IMG/VR virus record: IMGVR_UViG_3300020473_000013
Coordinates: 160,854 to 224,853 of that record
Strand: one strand, 5' to 3'
DNA length: 64,000 bases
Within the stretch, counting starts at the first letter, position 1; the number at the start of each line of letters is the position of its first letter. The notes beneath the pieces are model-generated. The model was not told the DNA's origin. It saw only the letters and a program-made list of their open reading frames with translations, and made no database searches. Below are positions 33,959 through 39,925 of the stretch, piece by piece. A program made the translations under genes and the position numbers.

Positions 33959-34645
33959 ATGATCAACCAAAAGTACACTCGTCTTTTCAATACTGAGCAC
34001 CGTCCGGTCGAGACCGGCGTGATCATCCCCGATGAAGGCATCGCCCTCGTCTACACCAAGGAAGGCGACAAGACCGTCGTTCGTCCGTCCACCGGCGCCG
34101 CCGGCGAGCACTTTGCGGGCCTGAGCCTGTCGCGCAACGCTCCGCCGCTGTTCATGCCGTACATCGAAGAAGCCTCCGTCGAAGGCGAGTTCCTGGAGCT
34201 GCCGCGCACTCCGATCGCCGGCCAGATTCTGGTGAAGATCGGTGGCACCAAGGTCACCATCAACGCCGGTACCGACGCACCTGCCGATGCTTCCAGCGTC
34301 AGTCTCGATGACAACACCATCCGCTTCCACGCTGATCACGACGGCGAAGACCTGATGGTGCAGATGATGTACGAGCCGACCATCACCGAAGCACGGCAGT
34401 GGAAAGGCGACATGCCGGTCGGCGGTCTGCCCTCTTCCGCTCAGGGTATCATCGGTGTCATCACCAAGGGCGACGCCAGCACTACCTACTTCGACGCCTC
34501 TGCCGACTGGTCTGGCGCAATCAAGGCCAAGCTGGGCCCGGACGGCATCTTCACTACCGTCGGCTCTGGCGCTCAGGCCGAAGGCGTCACCGTGCTGCAA
34601 TCGCCGACCCCGGCGGTTCCGCTCCTCGTCCTCAACATCGACTGA
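33959..34645 (+). CDS. Head structural/decoration protein
   Basis: Immediately upstream of the MCP; strongly biased codons typical of high expression. Confidence 0.65.
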   Translation: MINQKYTRLFNTEHRPVETGVIIPDEGIALVYTKEGDKTVVRPSTGAAGEHFAGLSLSRNAPPLFMPYIEEASVEGEFLELPRTPIAGQILVKIGGTKVTINAGTDAPADASSVSLDDNTIRFHADHDGEDLMVQMMYEPTITEARQWKGDMPVGGLPSSAQGIIGVITKGDASTTYFDASADWSGAIKAKLGPDGIFTTVGSGAQAEGVTVLQSPTPAVPLLVLNID

Positions 34646-34696: not shown

Positions 34697-35797
34697 ATGA
34701 CTCAACCGTACAAAGGCGCACGTATGGTGCTCGCCAGTGGCGATCCGATCGAAGAACTGCGCTTCGGCAACTCCAACCAGCGCGCGCTCGATCCGAAGAC
34801 CGGCGAGTTCAACGCCAACGACAAGGGCGAACTGGTCAATGCCATCAGCAACCTGATGTCGGCCTACGCCAGCGGTGAAGTTCGCGAACAGCAGCCTGCC
34901 GAGATGTCCAGCGCCGAGATTTCCGAAGCTCGTCGCGAAGTTCTCGCCAGCGCTCTGAACGACGCTACCGGTCAGGAGTGGGCAGCTCTGGGTTCCGGCC
35001 TCGCTCGCCAGATCGACTCTGAGACCAGCCGTCAGGGCTTCCTGCGTCGCATCGCTCAGGGCCAGACCCTGCGCCAGGGTGAAGTGCCGCGTGTTCCGAT
35101 GCCCGCGCACGACAGCATCGCCATCGTCGCCACCAACGCTTCGTCTGTCGGCTACCAGACCATCCGTCAGCGCGTGTTCACTCCGGACGAGTTCGAGATT
35201 CAGGCGAACGTCCGCGTCGAGAACCTGGACATCGAACAGGTGAACGGCGATCTGCTGGAGCACGCCTACAACGACGGCCTGCAGGCTGTGATGGTTCAGG
35301 AAGACCGCCTGTGGAAAGACGCTGCTGACAAGACCGTCGGTGTCGTGAACGATCTGGAGTACATCGCTGGCGAGCTGACTACCCGCAACCTGGGTAATCT
35401 GCGTCAGGCCGTGGCCCGCTGGAACCTGCCGGTCAACACCGCCATCATCAGTAACGACTACTGGGCGGACATCATCGGCAGCCAGGACTTCGCTACCTTC
35501 CTCGATCCGATCACCAAGTACGACTTGGCTCTGAACGGTCAGATCGGTACTCTGGTCGGCATGCAGCTCCTGACTGACGCCTTCCGTCAGCCGAACCAGA
35601 AGGTCCTCGGCAGCGGCGAAATCTACGTCGTCGCCAGCCCGGAGAACCACGCTGCCTACTCCACCCGTGGCGGCATCCGGTCCACTCCGACCTCCGGTGC
35701 CAACGCCGGTAACAGCACGCGCGGCTGGTTCATGACTGAGCCGTTTTCTTTTGTACTCGCCAACAGCCGCTCCGTGGCGAAAGGCAAGCGGGTCTAA
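34697..35797 (+). CDS. Major capsid protein (HK97 fold)
   Basis: 366 aa, extreme codon bias; RQGFLRRI..Q.L.QGEVPR, QEDRLW, GQIGTLVGM; position after protease and scaffold. Confidence 0.85.
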   Translation: MTQPYKGARMVLASGDPIEELRFGNSNQRALDPKTGEFNANDKGELVNAISNLMSAYASGEVREQQPAEMSSAEISEARREVLASALNDATGQEWAALGSGLARQIDSETSRQGFLRRIAQGQTLRQGEVPRVPMPAHDSIAIVATNASSVGYQTIRQRVFTPDEFEIQANVRVENLDIEQVNGDLLEHAYNDGLQAVMVQEDRLWKDAADKTVGVVNDLEYIAGELTTRNLGNLRQAVARWNLPVNTAIISNDYWADIIGSQDFATFLDPITKYDLALNGQIGTLVGMQLLTDAFRQPNQKVLGSGEIYVVASPENHAAYSTRGGIRSTPTSGANAGNSTRGWFMTEPFSFVLANSRSVAKGKRV

Positions 35798-35837
35798 TCT
35801 CCCGACCCGGAGATACCGAGCACGATGTAAAGAGTAC

Positions 35838-35921
35838 AGGGTATCGTGAGGACAAGGCCGGCCAGCCCTGTCGCTTCCCTGAGTGACTAACTCACGGTAC
35901 CCTTCTTATTGTTTCAGGGGA
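35838..35921 (+). ncRNA. Structured leader RNA (three-way junction, copy 1) upstream of the endonuclease
   Basis: P1 35838-35850/35891-35903, GAC, P2, P3 GTCGCT/AGTGAC, TAA; loop CCCTGA is complementary to TCAGGG at the RBS. Confidence 0.6.
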
Positions 35922-35929
35922 CAATCATC

Positions 35930-36943
35930 ATGCGAAGCGATTTTTATGTCTATGCACTTCTCGATCCGAGAAAGCCAGGCAAGTACCGTTACGGTAAACT
36001 CAGGTTCGACTATGAACCGTTCTACGTCGGAAAAGGATGCGGTAAAAGGCACGACGCTCACTTCAAGGTAAATCCTTCGAAGGTCTACAACAAGTGGAAG
36101 GATCGGAAGATACGTCGCATTCAGAAAGAAACAGGAAGCGACCCTATCGTCCGTATTTTGAAACGCGACGTTGTAGAGTCAACTGCCTTCCGCCTCGAAG
36201 CTAAAGCCATAGGGCTGATAGGGCGCAAGGGATCAGGCCCTCTCACCAACCTTACAGACGGCGGTGAAGGAACATCTGGCAGAGTGGCTTCCGCTGCTCA
36301 GCGATTGAAGAATGCGGCTTCATGCCGTAGAGTTCGATTGACCATGCCTAAAGGTAGACAGCAGCTATGGTTCAAGAGAATATCCGAAGCCAGCAAGCGT
36401 AGAACGCTAGAAGAACGGGCAGCACTCAGCAAGCGGTATAGCGACATCCAGCACAACCTGCCGGAAGACGTTGACGCCAAACGCCGTGCAGCTCTATCCA
36501 AGTCGAACAAGCGGTACCGTGAATCTATGACGGAGGAACAACGCGAAGCCGAGTCGAGAACCCTGTCCAGTGCAGTCTCCCGATATTGGGAATCAGCATC
36601 CGACGAGGAACGAAAGTCTCGCAGCGACGCGATCCGCCGTGGGTATGCCTCAAAGGCCAGATCGGAAGTAGAAGCAAAGAACCAGAAGATTGCCAATGCC
36701 ATCAAGCAACAACACAGCTCAGCCTCTCCGTTTGACAAGCGGATGCGTAGCTTCAACGTGATGGCAGGTGTCATGGTTCGTAACAGCGTTAACTCTGGCG
36801 AGATTGATCCTGCCGATGCGGATACGATCAAGGCACGCCTCAAAGTGTCTGCCACCAAGTTCTACTCGAAAGAGCATAATTTGGAGCGTGAACCCAAAGC
36901 CCTTCGGGAAAAGGTTCGCAACGTTATCGCCCAGTATGCGTAG
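35930..36943 (+). mobile_element. Free-standing GIY-YIG (LEM-3-like) homing endonuclease gene
   Basis: FYVYALLDPR...PFYVGKG.GKR..AH, LTNLTDGGEG, then helical NUMOD-like repeats; atypical A-rich codon usage. Confidence 0.85.
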
Positions 36944-36976
36944 CCATAAATATCGCTTCGTGTGTTGATTTTTCCT

Positions 36977-37225
36977 GACCAATAGGAGGAGATAATATGT
37001 GCTTCTAACATTGGCAGGTATCTCCTAAAGATCATTGGTCGTTAGACCGCACCGAGTGCGAGCACCCTGCGAGGACAAAGCACCGTAGCTTTGATGCTGT
37101 CTAGTCACATGGATTCCAGCATCTAACTCGCAGGGCGCTCCCTTTCTCTCGGGTGATCTTGTGTCTTGGTCGTAGCAAGCTGTCACGCCCGGGAGCGACC
37201 TGCGGCCAAGATTGTGCAAAGGGAG
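36977..37225 (+). ncRNA. Multi-domain structured RNA (hairpin, three-way-junction copy 2, crossing helices)
   Basis: At least six complementary pairings within about 250 non-coding nt (see findings). Confidence 0.6.
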
Positions 37226-37234
37226 GATAGTCCT

Positions 37235-37708
37235 GTGAATAAAGCGTGCGACCTTTTCGCACTAGCCATTACTGCCTTCAAGGAAGGTAAGTACGACTCC
37301 GCAGCTAAATTCTTCTCCTCCGCGATGGGGTCTGATGACCTCGACTCGTTCGTGAATGACATCGCCCGCAACGTTCCACGTTCGGCGCTCACGGGCCTTG
37401 TACCTTCTTCTGAAAACACACTGTCGCCGTCTCTGGCTTCTGCTGACTCTGAGGACCTTTCCTACATTGTCGAGCGGATCGAAGCTGGATTCCGGGCCGA
37501 GTGCTCTCTCCTTGATGAGGGTGATGAAGAAGCCGAGGTTCGAGCGTCCGATGAGGACGAGGATGATGACCTTGACGAGGAGGACGACCTCGACGATGAA
37601 GACGACGATGACCTCGATGCTGAGGACACGGAGTTGGATGACGAGGAAGACCACAACTCTGGTAAGATGAAGCTCACGGCGTCGGCTGGTCCTGTGCGAT
37701 TCAAGTAA
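37235..37708 (+). CDS. Acidic hypothetical (head-associated?) protein
   Basis: GGGAGG RBS then GTG 37235; D/E tract; LASA, RAS and TASA motifs. Confidence 0.7.
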   Translation: MNKACDLFALAITAFKEGKYDSAAKFFSSAMGSDDLDSFVNDIARNVPRSALTGLVPSSENTLSPSLASADSEDLSYIVERIEAGFRAECSLLDEGDEEAEVRASDEDEDDDLDEEDDLDDEDDDDLDAEDTELDDEEDHNSGKMKLTASAGPVRFK

Positions 37709-37712
37709 AACG

Positions 37713-37746
37713 ATCCCCCTCAGGGCACTCCCTAGGGGGATTTTTT
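37713..37746 (+). terminator. Intrinsic terminator
   Basis: ATCCCCCT...AGGGGGAT followed by TTTTT. Confidence 0.8.
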
Positions 37747-37775
37747 GTATCCCTGCGATGTAAGGAGTACAGCTT

Positions 37776-38453
37776 ATGTCCGCGAAAGGAGAGGGTTTCG
37801 ATCTACTCGCCTCCATACGCAACGCGCAGACCCCACTGTTCCTGACGCTCACTGGCTTTCGGAAGTCCATGGCCAAGCATCTGGGGCTGACGATTCTGCC
37901 GTTCATCCTGCACGACAACCCAAAGGCTGTGATTCGACGCAGCCAGAACGCAGAATACCCGTACGGATACTTTCGTCTCAACTCGTTCGAGATCATGCGG
38001 GACCAGCAGGCGGTCAAGACTATTCGTCGGCACGGTTCGACCCGCTCGCTCGATGACATGACCAACGCGGCTATCAGCAAAGGCTACATGTTCCCGTGTA
38101 AGCTGATGGTGGAGCTCCACTTCATCCACAATGAGCCTAGAGAGGTGCTAGCGCTGATCGAGAAGGCTTCTATCCTTGGAGCAGTAGACGGGTTTTCATT
38201 CGAGGCCACTATGGAAGGCTCAACGCCGTGGACGGTAGGAGTCGCTATGGAGGAAGGTCCCGTCGAGATTCCGCAGGTGTCCCTTGAGGAGGAGTCTGAT
38301 GCTGCTGCATTCGACATCCAGTTCTCCTTCTCTATCACTTCTCGCGTCGGTGTCGTCAAGAGCGTGCCCAAGATCAACAACCAAGGCCACGTCACACGCA
38401 ACATCGGTGTGCCTGGCGCGGAGCCTGAGCCTTTTTCAGGAGGTGACCAATGA
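37776..38453 (+). CDS. Putative neck/tail-terminator structural protein
   Basis: Between the head and sheath genes; YPYGYF and beta-rich pattern. Confidence 0.55.
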   Translation: MSAKGEGFDLLASIRNAQTPLFLTLTGFRKSMAKHLGLTILPFILHDNPKAVIRRSQNAEYPYGYFRLNSFEIMRDQQAVKTIRRHGSTRSLDDMTNAAISKGYMFPCKLMVELHFIHNEPREVLALIEKASILGAVDGFSFEATMEGSTPWTVGVAMEEGPVEIPQVSLEEESDAAAFDIQFSFSITSRVGVVKSVPKINNQGHVTRNIGVPGAEPEPFSGGDQ

Positions 38454-39925
38454 GCAAGTTTCGATCCGCGAGCCGTACCGTAGTCACGGAGATCAAGTCC
38501 TTCGTCGTGGACACGGTCGCCCGTACTGGTGCCTTTCGACAGTCCGTTAGTGCTCGTATTACAGAGACCGATTCTCTGGATCGGCGCGACATCAACGTGT
38601 CTGAGGAATACCCCTTTATCATACCCAAGGACACCAACGCGGTGCTAGGCATCCTCAGTCCGGAGCCTGTACGCCTCGTACTTACGCAGACAGGTGAGTA
38701 CGATCTGGAGCCTGAGCCCGAGCCTGTGCCAGACCCTCCCGCGTTCGACGTGTCAAGCCAGATATATGCAGGCAGCACCTTGAACATCGGCCTCACTGAT
38801 TCGTCAGTCAAGTATCCTCGCAACCGTTTAACCATCACCGCGTTTAACATGCGTACTGGTGAGACGGAGGCGGTAGAGCTAAACCGGGACGACGAGGACG
38901 TTTTCCGTGGAACCCTGCAAATCGCTCTGGGTGAGGACGGTAACGACTTCGACGGTGTGATGTACGCCGAGTCTCAACATCAAATCCTTCTCCAGTACCA
39001 CGTAAATCCTGATGAGAACGAGCTTCTGGAGACGACGGTCAATGTCGATTCTCCTTACACCGATCCTGCTATCTCTAGTCTCCACCGCGTATTTCCTGGG
39101 AAGCCTATTCCTGTATACGTGGATGATCCGGACCTTGATGGAGCGCATTCTGTTAGCGTCAACGTGCTGAACCTGAACTTCGGTTCGTCTCGGACGATGG
39201 AGCTAAGCCCTGTGGAAGGGGAGACTGGCCTGTTCTACGGCCTTCTGCTTACCCGTTCCGAGGACGCTCCTGAGAACGACAGCGCTATCACCGTCCGTGT
39301 TGGTGACGAGGTTTCCCTGACCTTCCGTTCCCCGTACTACGATCAGGTCGACCTCGTTGAGGAGATCGTGCTGATCGAGGATTCTCGTGACATCGACGCG
39401 CAAATCTCGGTCGAGGCCGAAGTCATGCAGGGAGGTAGTTTCGACATCGCCCTGAACGACTACAACCTGAGCGGCGTTGGTACCACCGAGCTAGTAGTGT
39501 CCAACGTTCGCACTCGGGAGTACGTGCTGGTCAAGTGCCGTGAGCTGATCCCGCACGGCGGCGTGTTCAACGGCACGGTCAACACTACCCTAGGAACATC
39601 GGATGTCGCCAACGGGCTTCTCGGTGTAGAGGTCGGAGACGTGATCCGCACCACGTACATCGACAGTACGGCTGAAAGCATGCCGTCCATTCGTGTCGAA
39701 GGAGACACGCTAGTCACTTCCGGCCTCGCTCCCTCGCCTGCCGGCATTTCTCTCATGGTTGAGTCGGAGCAGGAGCCCGAGACGGAGCCCGAGACGGAGA
39801 CGAAAACTCAAACGGTAGAAATGATTGTCGATGGCCTGTTCTACCTGAACGGCGCTTTCAAGGGCACGGTGGAGGTTTACGGACTCTCCCCAGAAATGAC
39901 TCGCTGTTCGATCCTCCACAGTTGA
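38450..39925 (+). CDS. Virion structural protein with three internal beta-repeats
   Basis: Repeats of I.L.D......V...N...G....V.L.......F.G.L bounded by EPEPEP and EPETEPET linkers. Confidence 0.7.
   Translation: MSKFRSASRTVVTEIKSFVVDTVARTGAFRQSVSARITETDSLDRRDINVSEEYPFIIPKDTNAVLGILSPEPVRLVLTQTGEYDLEPEPEPVPDPPAFDVSSQIYAGSTLNIGLTDSSVKYPRNRLTITAFNMRTGETEAVELNRDDEDVFRGTLQIALGEDGNDFDGVMYAESQHQILLQYHVNPDENELLETTVNVDSPYTDPAISSLHRVFPGKPIPVYVDDPDLDGAHSVSVNVLNLNFGSSRTMELSPVEGETGLFYGLLLTRSEDAPENDSAITVRVGDEVSLTFRSPYYDQVDLVEEIVLIEDSRDIDAQISVEAEVMQGGSFDIALNDYNLSGVGTTELVVSNVRTREYVLVKCRELIPHGGVFNGTVNTTLGTSDVANGLLGVEVGDVIRTTYIDSTAESMPSIRVEGDTLVTSGLAPSPAGISLMVESEQEPETEPETETKTQTVEMIVDGLFYLNGAFKGTVEVYGLSPEMTRCSILHS

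What the first reader, a model, noticed from the sequence alone, without database searches (positions are those of the whole stretch)
36977..37225. About 250-nt multi-domain non-coding RNA with crossing helices that hides a ribosome-binding site
Seen, beyond junction copy 2: hairpin GACCAAT/ATTGGTC (36977-83/37034-40) with AGGAGATA/TATCTCCT inside; CTCTCGGGTGA (37146-56) pairs with 37183-95; TCTTGGTCGTAG (37164-75) pairs over 12 bp with CTGCGGCCAAGA (37200-11). The last two helices cross (A-B-A'-B'). CTCCCTTT (37138-45) pairs with AAAGGGAG (37218-25), covering the SD of the 37235 gene and competing with the end of the junction stem. Inference: a pseudoknot or two-state switch controlling the gene after the capsid, or a standalone phage ncRNA. 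It is an unusually long gap for this dense genome.
Basis: partly seen in the sequence, partly recalled or inferred. Interest (0 to 1): 0.7.

Follow-up and report, generated by a model that had tools for sequence, protein, structure and literature searches.

The report
Structured RNA flanking a phage homing-endonuclease cassette
The 250-nt "non-coding RNA" is not one gene: it is the folded right-hand end of a mobile homing-endonuclease cassette joined to the phage's own structured spacer between the capsid gene and the next gene, and it holds a diverged copy of a conserved three-way-junction RNA motif that precedes homing-endonuclease genes in a whole group of jumbo phages.

Summary
It is transcribed at about capsid-mRNA level in four metatranscriptomes.

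It is a composite, not a single pseudoknotted riboregulator. Bases 35800-37027 are a 1,228-bp free-standing GIY-YIG homing-endonuclease (HEG) cassette. Sibling strains lack it at the DNA level.

The finding spans four parts:
- the 3' arm of a 39-bp long-range stem (35914-56 / 36937-78) that buries the HEG's ribosome-binding site and AUG;
- a hairpin at the cassette's right end;
- a native 133-nt domain (37028-37160) whose core (37059-37147) is a diverged second copy of a three-way-junction (3WJ) motif;
- a hairpin (37163-37212) conserved across the phage group.

The canonical 3WJ lies upstream of the HEG and covaries strongly. It precedes HEGs of at least three kinds (GIY-YIG, HNH-type, a DUF723/DUF7487 group) in about 30 distinct viral contigs and phage records, including two cultured phages. 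Rfam has no match.

The proposed crossing helices and the ribosome-binding-site mask are not supported: the mask costs +8.7 kcal/mol, and the crossing helix has no analogue in relatives.

The most likely role is insulation. HEG RNA is 4-10 times lower than RNA of either flanking gene.

The parts
34697..35797 (+). Major capsid (head) protein gene. It is complete and ends as in relatives.
   Evidence: PHROG major head protein, E 2e-106. Aligns end to end with PaBG, Lu11, HRDY3 and NCTB.
35800..37027 (+). Free-standing homing-endonuclease cassette of 1,228 bp. Sibling strains have 8 nt (CGCCCTTC) in its place.
   Evidence: The joint 35799->37028 appears in DNA runs X7 and X8 with zero depth over the HEG. 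It also appears in RNA runs X4 and X5, on contigs carrying strain SNPs.
35826..35833 (+). Promoter-like octamer TGTAAAGA, a variant of this genome's over-represented TGTAAA(T/G)A motif, immediately 5' of the three-way junction.
   Evidence: 37 copies in the genome, 24 of them 12-72 nt upstream of an SD and ORF start. Letter permutations give 14% with such a start and a mean of 1.6 copies. Promoter function is inferred.
35838..35903 (+). Three-way junction, copy 1 (canonical HEG-leader motif). Outer stem 35838-50 / 35891-903. Small hairpin with near-invariant sequence CAAGGC-CGGCCA-GCCCUG. Third hairpin 35870-76 / 35881-87. A pyrimidine tract follows at 35904-16.
   Evidence: MFE fold z -3.5. 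Covariance model R1. On the post-capsid set, 96.9% of cells are paired, 19 of 24 pairs are compensatory, and 0 of 500 shuffles match. An independent set of 9 distinct sequences gives the same picture.
35914..35956 (+). 5' arm of the long-range stem. It contains the HEG's SD (AGGGGA) and AUG (35930).
   Evidence: Duplex of 39 bp at about -50 kcal/mol, against shuffles at -16 +/- 3.5. Conserved in L056, L005 and L076 with 12 compensatory positions and 22 G.U against 1 A.C.
35930..36943 (+). GIY-YIG homing endonuclease gene (337 aa).
   Evidence: Pfam LEM-3_GIY-YIG, E 2.5e-8. PHROG homing endonuclease. Homologues at the same site in L056, L005, L076 and L066.
36937..36978 (+). 3' arm of the long-range stem.
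   Evidence: (I1).
36945..36952 (+). CATAAATA, matching 6 of 8 positions of the phage promoter-like consensus. RNA depth of the HEG+ strain rises from about 1 to 15 at roughly 36951.
   Evidence: Sequence. Contig 12 of run X4 begins at 36951. Promoter function is speculative.
36979..37027 (+). Hairpin at the cassette's right end (AGGAGAUA 36987-94 / UAUCUCCU 37019-26). It contains an SD-like GAGGAGAUAA and a 3-codon mini-ORF.
   Evidence: z -2.2, weak. It ends exactly at the cassette boundary.
37028..37160 (+). Native, self-closing 133-nt domain. Closing stem 37028-35 / 37153-60; mini-hairpin 37036-49; extension 37052-56 / 37148-52; three-way junction at the core.
   Evidence: z -6.26, 0 of 200 shuffles as good. 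Helices listed. Present in the HEG-less allele with only a 1-nt deletion at 37146.
37059..37147 (+). Three-way junction, copy 2 (diverged). Outer stem 37060-73 / 37127-40. Small hairpin CAAAGC-ACCGUA-GCUUUG. Third hairpin 37093-99 / 37117-23. Followed by CCUUUCUCU.
   Evidence: 41.1 bits, E about 1e-9 with model R1. z -6.16.
37163..37212 (+). Post-capsid hairpin conserved across the phage group.
   Evidence: z -3.78 on + against -0.86 on -. The loop motif is shared with HEG-less L057 and with L056. Positional analogues with unrelated stems and an AGCGCC apical loop occur in most fetched relatives, including PaBG, Lu11 and HRDY3.
37220..37237 (+). SD (AGGGAGGA, 37220-27) and GTG start (37235) of the acidic 157-aa gene after the capsid gene (37235-37708).
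   Evidence: Start agrees with homologues.
37715..37746 (+). Canonical intrinsic terminator (CCCCCU...AGGGGG, then U6) after the acidic gene. RNA coverage stops here.
   Evidence: Sequence. Depth is 0 from 37744 to 38500 in X2 and X3, against 127-616 upstream.

Best explanation
The flagged stretch is a composite untranslated region, created when a free-standing GIY-YIG homing-endonuclease (HEG) cassette (35800-37027) inserted between the major capsid gene and the following acidic gene of a PaBG-like jumbo phage.

Shown:
- Bases 36937-36978 are the 3' arm of a 39-bp RNA stem whose 5' arm contains the HEG's Shine-Dalgarno sequence and AUG.
- Bases 36979-37027 form a hairpin that ends the cassette.
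- Bases 37028-37234 are the resident spacer. It holds a self-closing 133-nt domain built round a diverged copy of the three-way-junction (3WJ) motif, then a 13-bp hairpin conserved across the phage group, then the downstream gene's SD.
- The canonical 3WJ sits 5' of the HEG, just after a promoter-like octamer.
- Together with a few variant copies, that motif precedes HEGs of several nuclease kinds across this group of phages.

Inferred mechanism: the structures insulate the selfish gene from the late capsid operon.
- The 3WJ and its pyrimidine tract attenuate or end capsid transcripts, and cap their 3' ends.
- The long-range stem keeps the HEG untranslated on read-through RNA. It is also a plausible RNase III substrate.
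- RNA for the downstream gene is restored either by cleavage at that stem followed by selective decay of the HEG segment, or by a promoter-like CATAAATA at the HEG's 3' end.
- The native 3WJ-2 domain and the conserved hairpin then form a long, stable 5' leader or inter-cistronic spacer. They are not a pseudoknot switch.
- 3WJ-2 is most simply a relic of an earlier HEG cassette, kept as a structural spacer.
For: Cassette and polymorphism:
- Relatives without a HEG have a 59-114-nt spacer.
- DNA runs X7 and X8 carry the joint 35799->37028 with 8 replacement nt and zero HEG depth.
- Six synonymous differences cluster at 35698-35748, just upstream of the insertion site (codon positions read from the sequence).

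Long-range stem:
- About -50 kcal/mol against -16 for shuffles, and conserved in 4 cassettes.
- 12 compensatory positions, and 22 G.U against 1 A.C, which points to + strand RNA.

Three-way junction:
- All 7 post-capsid copies fold alike by MFE alone.
- Covariation: 19 of 24 pairs compensatory, 0 of 500 shuffles as good.
- Copy 2 scores 41 bits.
- 19 further IMG/VR contigs with the exact 20-mer all match the model and covary.
- In those examined, a HEG start follows 15-34 nt downstream.
- Two cultured phages carry it.
- It is absent from HEG-less relatives even with search filters off.

Expression:
- Within the HEG+ strain in run X4, depth goes from 16.1 (35668-35919) to 3.5-4.0 (HEG ORF) to 15.1 (36951-37057).
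- X2 gives 616 / 63 / 446 and X3 gives 135 / 17 / 127.
- Depth is zero beyond the terminator at 37746, while DNA depth is flat at 26.2.

Precedent: T4 free-standing HEGs are controlled by terminators, RNase E processing, RBS-sequestering hairpins, and a promoter between the HEG and the downstream gene (PMC2988022).
Against: - Depths are per-contig means from Logan assemblies, with no strand and no true 5' or 3' ends. Termination, processing and promoter activity are therefore inferred, not seen.
- At high depth (X2, X3) contigs run straight through both 3WJs and both stem arms, so unprocessed read-through RNA exists.
- Across the wider family the tract after the 3WJ is not always U-rich, so the motif is not simply an intrinsic terminator.
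- The near-invariance of its small hairpin is unexplained by insulation.
- 3WJ-2 keeps all three helices intact although its small hairpin has diverged. That argues for some retained function rather than a decaying relic.
- The long-range stem is specific to this HEG lineage. It is absent from 9 other motif-bearing cassettes.
Confidence: 0.6

Rival explanations
1. One reading: one ~250-nt cis-regulatory or standalone ncRNA, whose crossing helices (37146-56 / 37183-95 with 37164-75 / 37200-11) and anti-SD pairing (37138-45 / 37218-25) form a pseudoknot or two-state switch that gates translation of the gene at 37235.
For: - The complementarities exist, and helix A is strong as an isolated duplex (-18 kcal/mol).
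- The loop left over (10 nt on the 5' side, 4 nt on the 3' side) could sterically allow pairing between the loop and an upstream strand (inference).
- Segments 37060-73 and 37193-205 are near-repeats. Segment 37129-42 can therefore pair with either one; the alternative duplex is -27 kcal/mol.
- The region is transcribed with the downstream gene.
Against: - Enforcing the anti-SD pairing costs +8.7 kcal/mol, and its ensemble probability is about 0.
- The alternative 2:3 state costs +38 kcal/mol.
- Helix A has no analogue in L057, L056 or L005, which carry the same or a closely related loop motif (fraction of shuffles at least as good: 0.33-0.77). It is marginal even in the window (0.07).
- The anti-SD segment overlaps a stem that fits the 3WJ covariance model.
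- The first hairpin straddles a mobile-element boundary, so it cannot be part of an ancestral riboregulator.
Confidence: 0.08
2. The native part (the 3WJ-2 domain plus the conserved hairpin, 37028-37212) is a functional attenuator, processing signal or protein-binding element of the phage itself. It would set the ratio of capsid mRNA to downstream-gene mRNA independently of any HEG. HEG cassettes would have copied or captured the 3WJ from such native elements, rather than the reverse.
For: - The domain is retained almost unchanged in the HEG-less strain, while the capsid gene's 3' end nearby carries 6 SNPs in 50 nt.
- All three helices are intact, z -6.2.
- The stem is followed by CCUUUCUCU.
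- The neighbouring hairpin with a conserved apical loop is present in nearly all fetched members of the phage group.
Against: - No other HEG-less relative has a 3WJ in this spacer.
- In 30 of the 31 distinct 3WJ copies found, the motif directly precedes a HEG.
- Copy 2 has lost the near-invariant small-hairpin sequence that defines the family.
- RNA depth hardly falls across it in the HEG-less strain (30.8 to 20.7).
Confidence: 0.2
3. The whole 1.4-kb insert is a group I (or other self-splicing) intron carrying its HEG in a loop, and the flagged region is the intron's 3' core.
For: - The HEG ORF is looped out by a long stem, as in ORF-bearing group I introns.
- About 130 + 290 nt of structured flanks lie either side.
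- There is a superficial AUAGUCC / GACUAA resemblance to P7 (read by eye).
Against: - No Rfam intron hit, even at E<=10.
- Both flanking genes are complete, and the insert is intergenic.
- There is no spliced joint in X2 and X3, where only the HEG+ strain is present at depths up to 616.
- The only joint carries 8 extra nt and strain SNPs, and it exists as DNA.
- The 3' flanks of L056, L005 and the window are not conserved.
Confidence: 0.02
4. The inverted repeats act at the DNA level, for example as terminal inverted repeats of a transposon-like unit, cruciforms, or protein operators, rather than as RNA structures.
For: - 39-bp imperfect inverted repeats flank the ORF.
- GGCCGGCC in the small hairpin is an 8-bp DNA palindrome.
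- I-TevI is known to bind a DNA operator in its own promoter region (PMC2988022).
Against: - There are 22 G.U pairs against 1 A.C in the long stem.
- The hairpin 37161-37214 folds with z -3.8 on + but -0.9 on -. Such strand asymmetry is expected for RNA, not DNA.
- The repeats are not at the ends of the mobile unit.
- The small-hairpin sequence has no significant similarity to the flanking target DNA.
Confidence: 0.05

Closest known systems
Regulatory RNA structures of free-standing and intron-encoded homing endonucleases in T4-like phages (mobE, segB, segG, I-TevI/II/III)
   Same: - A selfish nuclease gene sits between essential, highly expressed genes.
- Terminator-like structures lie upstream of or inside it.
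- A stable RNA structure sequesters its RBS.
- RNA processing, or a promoter between the HEG and the downstream gene, restores downstream expression (PMC2988022).
   Different: - Here the RBS is masked by a 39-bp long-range duplex with sequence beyond the stop codon, about 1 kb away, rather than by a local hairpin.
- The upstream element is a three-way junction with a near-invariant 20-nt hairpin, shared by HEGs of several nuclease kinds.
- The host is a PaBG-like jumbo phage.
- No function has been tested.
RNase III processing stems (T7 early and late mRNA sites; the 16S and 23S flanking stems of rRNA operons)
   Same: Long imperfect duplexes formed by sequences flanking a transcript segment. 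Cleavage releases the enclosed segment and leaves hairpin-protected ends on the neighbouring RNAs.
   Different: Cleavage here is only inferred, from contig boundaries at about 35919-35932 and about 36951 and from the 4-10-fold lower HEG depth. No end mapping or rnc dependence is available.
GIR1 lariat-capping ribozyme upstream of the HEG in twin-ribozyme group I introns
   Same: A conserved, junction-containing structured RNA placed immediately 5' of a homing-endonuclease ORF, travelling with it.
   Different: - There is no sequence or model match: Rfam, which as I recall includes GIR1, gave no relevant hit.
- The motif is about 66 nt against about 190 nt.
- RNA contigs run uncut through the 3WJ.
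- It is not inside an intron.
Intrinsic (rho-independent) terminators and attenuators
   Same: A GC-rich 12-14-bp stem followed by a pyrimidine/U-rich tract directly after a highly expressed gene. In the PaBG-like copies an A-rich tract lies upstream.
   Different: - The 'loop' is a branched, sequence-conserved junction.
- The tail is not U-rich in many family members.
- Read-through is substantial.
- The real operon terminator is the canonical one at 37715-37746.

Membership tests
Free-standing homing endonuclease cassette | Encodes a nuclease of a recognised HEG family | tested here: met
   Pfam LEM-3_GIY-YIG, E 2.5e-8. PHROG homing endonuclease.
Free-standing homing endonuclease cassette | Inserted between intact conserved genes, not inside an intron or intein | tested here: met
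   The capsid gene and the next gene are complete. No intron model matches.
Free-standing homing endonuclease cassette | Presence/absence polymorphism at the same site among close relatives | tested here: met
   A HEG-less allele exists as DNA in runs X7 and X8. L057 lacks the HEG while L056 and L005 have it. The same holds for Erwinia phages SNUABM_16 and SNUABM_22.
Free-standing homing endonuclease cassette | Cleaves the HEG-less allele and spreads by gene conversion, with co-conversion of flanks | not testable with these tools
   Only indirect evidence: 6 synonymous differences, including TCT->AGT Ser, clustered 50-100 nt upstream of the insertion site.
RBS-sequestering RNA structure | A stable helix includes the SD and start codon, and is conserved with compensatory change | tested here: met
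   39 bp at about -50 kcal/mol, covering -16 to +26 around the AUG. 12 compensatory positions in 4 sequences.
RBS-sequestering RNA structure | Represses translation | not testable with these tools
   Needs reporter fusions.
Group I intron | Conserved P3-P9 core with a G-binding P7, detectable by covariance model | tested here: not met
   No Intron_gpI hit at the gathering threshold or at E<=10. The 3' flanks of homologous cassettes are unconserved.
Group I intron | RNA-level excision with exon ligation | tested here: not met
   No joint in the HEG+-only RNA runs X2 and X3. The only joint is a DNA allele with 8 extra nt.
Intrinsic terminator | GC-rich stem directly followed by a U-tract | tested here: inconclusive
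   The stems are strong. The tails are CUUCUUAUUGUUU (copy 1) and CCUUUCUCU (copy 2), and they vary in the wider family. The simple scan does not call them.
Intrinsic terminator | Transcript 3' ends at the tail | tested here: inconclusive
   In X4 a contig ends at 35919 with a 4-fold depth drop. X2, X3 and X5 contigs read through.
H-type pseudoknot or riboswitch-like two-state switch | Crossing helices, or mutually exclusive helices of comparable stability, both conserved | tested here: not met
   Alternative states cost +8.7 and +38 kcal/mol. The crossing helix is not conserved. No Rfam riboswitch matches.
HEG-leader three-way-junction motif (defined here; not in Rfam) | 12-14-bp outer stem, a 5-6-bp hairpin with a 6-nt loop, a 5-8-bp hairpin, and junction strands GA(A/C)AA and CUA(N) | tested here: met
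   Copy 2 (37059-37147) has all three helices and junctions GGACAA / CUAA. It scores 41 bits.
HEG-leader three-way-junction motif (defined here; not in Rfam) | Near-invariant small-hairpin sequence AAGGCCGGCCAGCC | tested here: not met
   Copy 2 has AAAGCACCGUAGCU. Copy 1 has the canonical sequence.
HEG-leader three-way-junction motif (defined here; not in Rfam) | Lies roughly 15-45 nt upstream of a HEG start codon | tested here: not met
   Copy 2 is followed by the conserved hairpin and the acidic gene, not by a HEG. Copy 1 lies 27 nt from the HEG's AUG.

The most novel reading that the evidence does not exclude
The three-way junction, with its 20-nt near-invariant hairpin, could be a new class of functional RNA. 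Candidates are a protein- or ligand-responsive attenuator, a processing signal, or a small ribozyme, serving as a portable expression controller for homing endonucleases of unrelated nuclease kinds in a group of jumbo phages. The diverged copy in the flagged region, together with its near-repeat partner in the conserved hairpin (37129-42 can pair with either 37060-73 or 37193-205), could be a domesticated version that tunes expression of the gene after the capsid gene.
Probability: 0.2. Interest if true: 0.8.

Novelty: new variant of a known kind. Interest (0 to 1): 0.6.

Why it matters
- How selfish nuclease genes sit inside the most highly expressed phage operons without harming them has been worked out only for a few T4-family cases.
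- This locus shows a different solution in uncultured marine jumbo phages. It is supported by natural HEG+/HEG- strains and by metatranscriptomes. The solution combines a 39-bp ORF-bracketing stem with a covarying three-way-junction leader.
- The leader travels with HEGs of at least three nuclease kinds and matches no Rfam family.
- Two cultured phages carry it: Erwinia phage pEa_SNUABM_22, which has a HEG-less sibling (SNUABM_16), and Burkholderia phage BCSR5. The motif's function is therefore directly testable.
- For genome annotation, the case warns that long structured 'ncRNA-like' gaps next to capsid genes can be mobile-element scars joined to native spacers.

Tried and rejected
- **Rfam.** The whole window at gathering thresholds, and 35500-37800 at E<=10, gave nothing relevant. 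No tRNA or tmRNA.
- **Group I intron.** Rejected; see the rival explanations.
- **Repeats elsewhere.** blastn against the 225-kb genome found none. The 3WJ model finds only this locus.
- **Similar DNA in named phages.** No match for the 1.4-kb insert.
- **Small-hairpin sequence as a mimic of the HEG's DNA target (I-TevI-style operator).** Local alignments to both flanks score no better than shuffles.
- **Exact 20-mer in bacterial genomes.** There were 17 hits in mostly GC-rich taxa, but none matches the full three-way junction: 7 of the 17 loci gave only the bare 18-nt hairpin and 3 a partial match. They are taken as chance or coding matches.
- **Conserved loop CUGUCACGCCCGGGAG in IMG/VR.** Only the two known relatives plus three coding coincidences.
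- **Metagenome scan with the capsid protein.** Few new close relatives. L101 is the same sequence as the window.
- **The ORF-bracketing stem as a general feature of motif-bearing cassettes.** Not so: 9 other cassettes score no better than shuffles.
- **Sigma-70 promoter and simple terminator scan.** Nothing useful on the + strand.
- **MAFFT plus RNAalifold on the junction.** This failed because the stems share no sequence. It was solved by a hand-given structure and a covariance-model alignment.
- **Coding potential.** Only mechanical ORFs. The - strand ORF 37025-37219 would be frameshifted by the natural 1-nt deletion at 37146.
Full report
**Context**

The window is the last 64 kb of a 224,853-bp phage genome with direct terminal repeats. 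Its major capsid protein is 68% identical to that of Pseudomonas phage PaBG.

The local gene order is:
- virion protein, 33959-34645
- major capsid protein, 34697-35797
- an ORF with a GIY-YIG nuclease domain, 35930-36943
- an acidic 157-aa gene starting with GTG at 37235
- further structural genes
- tail sheath, 39977

In PaBG, Lu11, HRDY3 and NCTB the capsid gene is followed after 59-106 nt by the homologue of the acidic gene. Here the two are 1,437 nt apart. Both flanking genes are full length.

**The observation**

The stretch 36944-37240 folds with z = -4.97 on the + strand against -2.83 on the - strand. Rfam gives no match, at gathering thresholds or at E<=10.

**A mobile cassette defines the left part**

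Public runs hold this sequence. DNA runs X7 and X8, from other samples, have zero depth over 35800-37027. They contain contigs that join 35799 to 37028 through 8 other letters (CGCCCTTC), with 180-189 nt on the shorter side.

The same joint appears in metatranscriptome runs X4 and X5, on contigs that carry strain SNPs. So 35800-37027 is a 1,228-bp insertion that sibling strains lack as DNA. It is not an intron: runs X2 and X3, which contain only the HEG+ strain at depths up to 616, show no joint.

Relative to the HEG-less strain, the HEG+ strain has six differences at 35698-35748. All are synonymous, and they include a TCT-to-AGT serine switch (positions; codon phase read from the sequence). 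Only three further differences occur in the 1.1 kb upstream. This is the pattern expected of co-conversion or target-site immunity around a homing site (inference).

Homologous HEGs occupy the same site in L056, L005, L076 and L066 (capsid 90%, 95%, 73% and 66% identical). L060, L062 and L107 carry shorter or only partly recovered homologues at that site. L057 (88%) has none.

**Long-range stem**

The inverted repeat found is a 39-bp duplex between 35914-35956 and 36937-36978. The 5' arm contains the HEG's SD and AUG. The 3' arm spans the last two sense codons, the stop codon and the 35 nt after it.

Its energy is about -50 kcal/mol, against -16 +/- 3.5 for shuffled partners. The same duplex exists in L056, L005 and L076, at -47 to -59 kcal/mol.

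Across the four sequences, 12 positions change on both sides and 10 on one side. There are 22 G.U pairs against a single A.C mismatch. That asymmetry points to selection on the + strand RNA rather than on DNA.

Nine other motif-bearing HEG cassettes lack such a stem, so it is a lineage-specific device. The first 35 nt of the spacer after the HEG stop codon, which overlap the flagged stretch by only 2 nt, therefore belong to a translational mask of the HEG, not to a regulator of the downstream gene.

**Three-way junction**

Between the capsid stop codon and the HEG lies a three-way junction (3WJ) at 35838-35903. It has:
- a 13-bp outer stem
- a small hairpin, CAAGGC-CGGCCA-GCCCUG
- a 7-bp hairpin
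- junction strands GGA and CUAA
- a pyrimidine tract after it

Seven sequences fold this way by MFE alone: the window's two copies and those of L056, L005, L076, L060 and L062. A covariance model was built from three of them. It finds 37059-37147 inside the flagged region at 41 bits, E about 1e-9.

On the model alignment, 96.9% of cells pair and 19 of 24 pairs show compensatory change. No shuffle out of 500 and no slid register comes close. The alignment is fitted to the model, which inflates these figures somewhat. The independent MFE folds argue the same way.

It differs in that its small hairpin is CAAAGC-ACCGUA-GCUUUG.

**The junction is a family**

The exact 20-mer GAMAAGGCCGGCCAGCCCTG occurs in 22 IMG/VR contigs, 19 of them new. 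All 19 match the model.

Their 9 distinct sequences covary in 13 of 13 outer-stem pairs and 6 of 6 pairs of the third helix, while the small hairpin is invariant.

In the eight distinct elements where an ORF could be called, it starts 15-34 nt downstream. A ninth (L112) is followed about 40 nt downstream by a GIY-YIG homologue with no clean ORF. The ORFs fall into these kinds:
- GIY-YIG HEGs: L108, L113, L114, L127, L128
- an HNH-type HEG: L119
- a DUF723 / phrog_3339 HEG: L124
- a possible ParB-like nuclease: L110

Two cultured phages carry the motif:
- Erwinia phage pEa_SNUABM_22, after its capsid gene and before a GIY-YIG gene
- Burkholderia phage BCSR5, before a DUF7487 / phrog_3339 HEG

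The sibling Erwinia phage SNUABM_16 has neither the HEG nor the motif. Most of the motif-bearing contigs share other genes with this genome, so they form one broad group of phages. Hits of the 20-mer in bacterial genomes never cover the full junction and are taken as chance.

**A promoter-like octamer precedes the junction**

TGTAAAGA (35826-33) lies 4 nt before the junction. TGTAAA(T/G)A occurs 37 times in the genome. TGTAAATA alone occurs 22 times, against a mean of 1.6 for permutations of its letters. In 24 of the 37 cases an SD and the start of an ORF of at least 80 aa follow within 12-72 nt, against 14% for the controls.

Similar octamers precede the junction in several family members. 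I infer that the HEG has its own phage-type promoter and that the junction is its 5' leader.

**The native part of the flagged region**

In the HEG-less allele, 37028-37234 follows the capsid stop codon almost unchanged: one base is deleted at 37146, and 37163 is G>A.

Bases 37028-37160 fold as one closed domain (z -6.26). Its parts are a closing stem 37028-35 / 37153-60, a mini-hairpin, an extension 37052-56 / 37148-52, and 3WJ-2.

Bases 37163-37212 form a 13-bp hairpin. Its z is -3.78 on the + strand and -0.86 on the - strand. Its loop, CUGUCACGCCCGGGAG, is shared with HEG-less L057 and with L056.

Most fetched relatives, including PaBG, Lu11 and HRDY3, have at the same place a long stem of unrelated sequence capped by GG-AGCGCC-CC.

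No other HEG-less relative has a junction in this spacer. I therefore read 3WJ-2 as the remnant of an earlier cassette, but its intact helices leave room for a retained function.

**The proposed pseudoknot and SD mask**

- Enforcing 37138-45 / 37218-25 raises the energy by 8.7 kcal/mol, and the pairing has zero ensemble probability. It would open the 3WJ-2 outer stem.
- The crossing helix 37146-55 / 37186-95 is -18 kcal/mol in isolation. It competes with the nested closing helices and has no analogue in the three relatives with the same or a closely related loop motif.
- Segments 37060-73 and 37193-205 are near-repeats, so 37129-42 can pair with either (-27 kcal/mol for the second). That state costs 38 kcal/mol overall.
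- The hairpin 36977-83 / 37034-40 spans the cassette boundary and overlaps the long-range stem.

**Expression**

DNA depth is flat, at 26.2 in run X1. RNA depth is not:

| Run | Capsid-gene contig | HEG interior | HEG 3' part through the acidic gene |
|---|---|---|---|
| X2 | 616 | 63 | 446 |
| X3 | 135 | 17 | 127 |

In X4 the contigs specific to the HEG+ strain give 16.1 (35668-35919), 3.5-4.0 (HEG ORF) and 15.1 (36951-37057).

Nothing is seen from 37744 to 38500 in X2 and X3, just beyond a canonical terminator at 37715-37746. The flagged region is therefore real RNA, contiguous with the acidic gene's mRNA, at about capsid-mRNA level and 4-10 times above the HEG.

These are contig-mean depths without strand, so ends are only approximate.

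**Mechanism proposed (inferred)**

- The junction with its pyrimidine tract limits read-through from the capsid gene and protects that mRNA's 3' end.
- The 39-bp stem keeps the HEG untranslated. It may be cut by RNase III, after which the HEG segment decays.
- Alternatively, a CATAAATA at 36945-52 (6 of 8 positions match the promoter-like consensus) restarts transcription, as the promoter between mobE and nrdB does in T4.
- The native 3WJ-2 domain and the conserved hairpin then act as a stable leader or spacer.

This parallels the published multilayer control of T4 HEGs (PMC2988022) but uses different RNA devices. What the near-invariant small hairpin of the junction binds or does remains unexplained.

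Noticed in passing
window 35838-35903; L146:2487-2564 (Erwinia phage pEa_SNUABM_22); L147:2486-2561 (Burkholderia phage BCSR5); L108, L110, L112-L114, L119, L124, L127, L128: A covarying three-way-junction RNA motif with a near-invariant 20-nt hairpin (GAMAAGGCCGGCCAGCCCUG) lies 15-45 nt upstream of homing-endonuclease genes of at least three kinds (GIY-YIG, HNH-type, DUF723/DUF7487, possibly ParB-like). It is found at different genomic sites in related jumbo phages and matches no Rfam family.
   Followed up: yes
window 35826-35833 and 36 other sites in the genome (e.g. window 1062, 4577, 6985, 9376, 54063, 57864): TGTAAA(T/G)A is about 14-fold over-represented. In 24 of 37 cases it lies 12-72 nt upstream of an SD and ORF start. 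It looks like this phage's promoter consensus and resembles the T4 late promoter TATAAATA.
   Followed up: partly
window 35698-35748 (also 35503, 35506, 35551): A cluster of exclusively synonymous differences between HEG+ and HEG- strains in the last 100 nt of the capsid gene, including a two-base TCT->AGT serine switch. This suggests the HEG's target or immunity region, or a co-conversion tract.
   Followed up: partly
window 37163-37212; L001:4905-4942; L003:4754-4787; L004:4747-4794; L082, L061, L100, L095, L066, L107, L060: Almost every fetched member of the phage group has a long hairpin of lineage-specific stem sequence after the capsid gene (or after the HEG). It is capped by a conserved apical GG-AGCGCC-CC element (ACGCCC in the window's lineage). 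It occurs only once per genome here, and its function is unknown.
   Followed up: partly
window 36985-37008: The cassette's right end contains GAGGAGAUAA, then AUG UGC UUC UAA. The 10-mer is identical to the ribosome-binding site of the acidic gene in L005 and L057 (GAGGAGATAACCCATG). It may be a relic of the donor phage's gene start carried along with the cassette.
   Followed up: no
window 37060-37073 vs 37193-37205: A near direct repeat (GAGCACCCUGCGAG and GAGCGACCUGCGG) makes the 3' arm of 3WJ-2 complementary to the 3' half of the conserved hairpin (14 bp, -27 kcal/mol). It is energetically disfavoured as a state, and its origin is unexplained.
   Followed up: partly
window 37715-37746: A canonical intrinsic terminator follows the acidic gene, and metatranscriptome coverage stops there. 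The capsid gene and the acidic gene therefore appear to form the highly expressed unit. The acidic protein has no Pfam or PHROG match.
   Followed up: partly
L059:4090-4540; L078, L080 and L105 (about 2.1-2.4 kb between the capsid gene and the third gene): Other relatives carry different insertions at the same post-capsid site: an AT-rich segment of about 440 nt in L059, and larger inserts elsewhere. The site looks like a hotspot for mobile DNA.
   Followed up: no
L066:4110-4200: One homologous post-capsid HEG (L066) lacks the three-way junction and has a different upstream hairpin. It keeps the pairing between the ORF start and the sequence after the stop codon.
   Followed up: no
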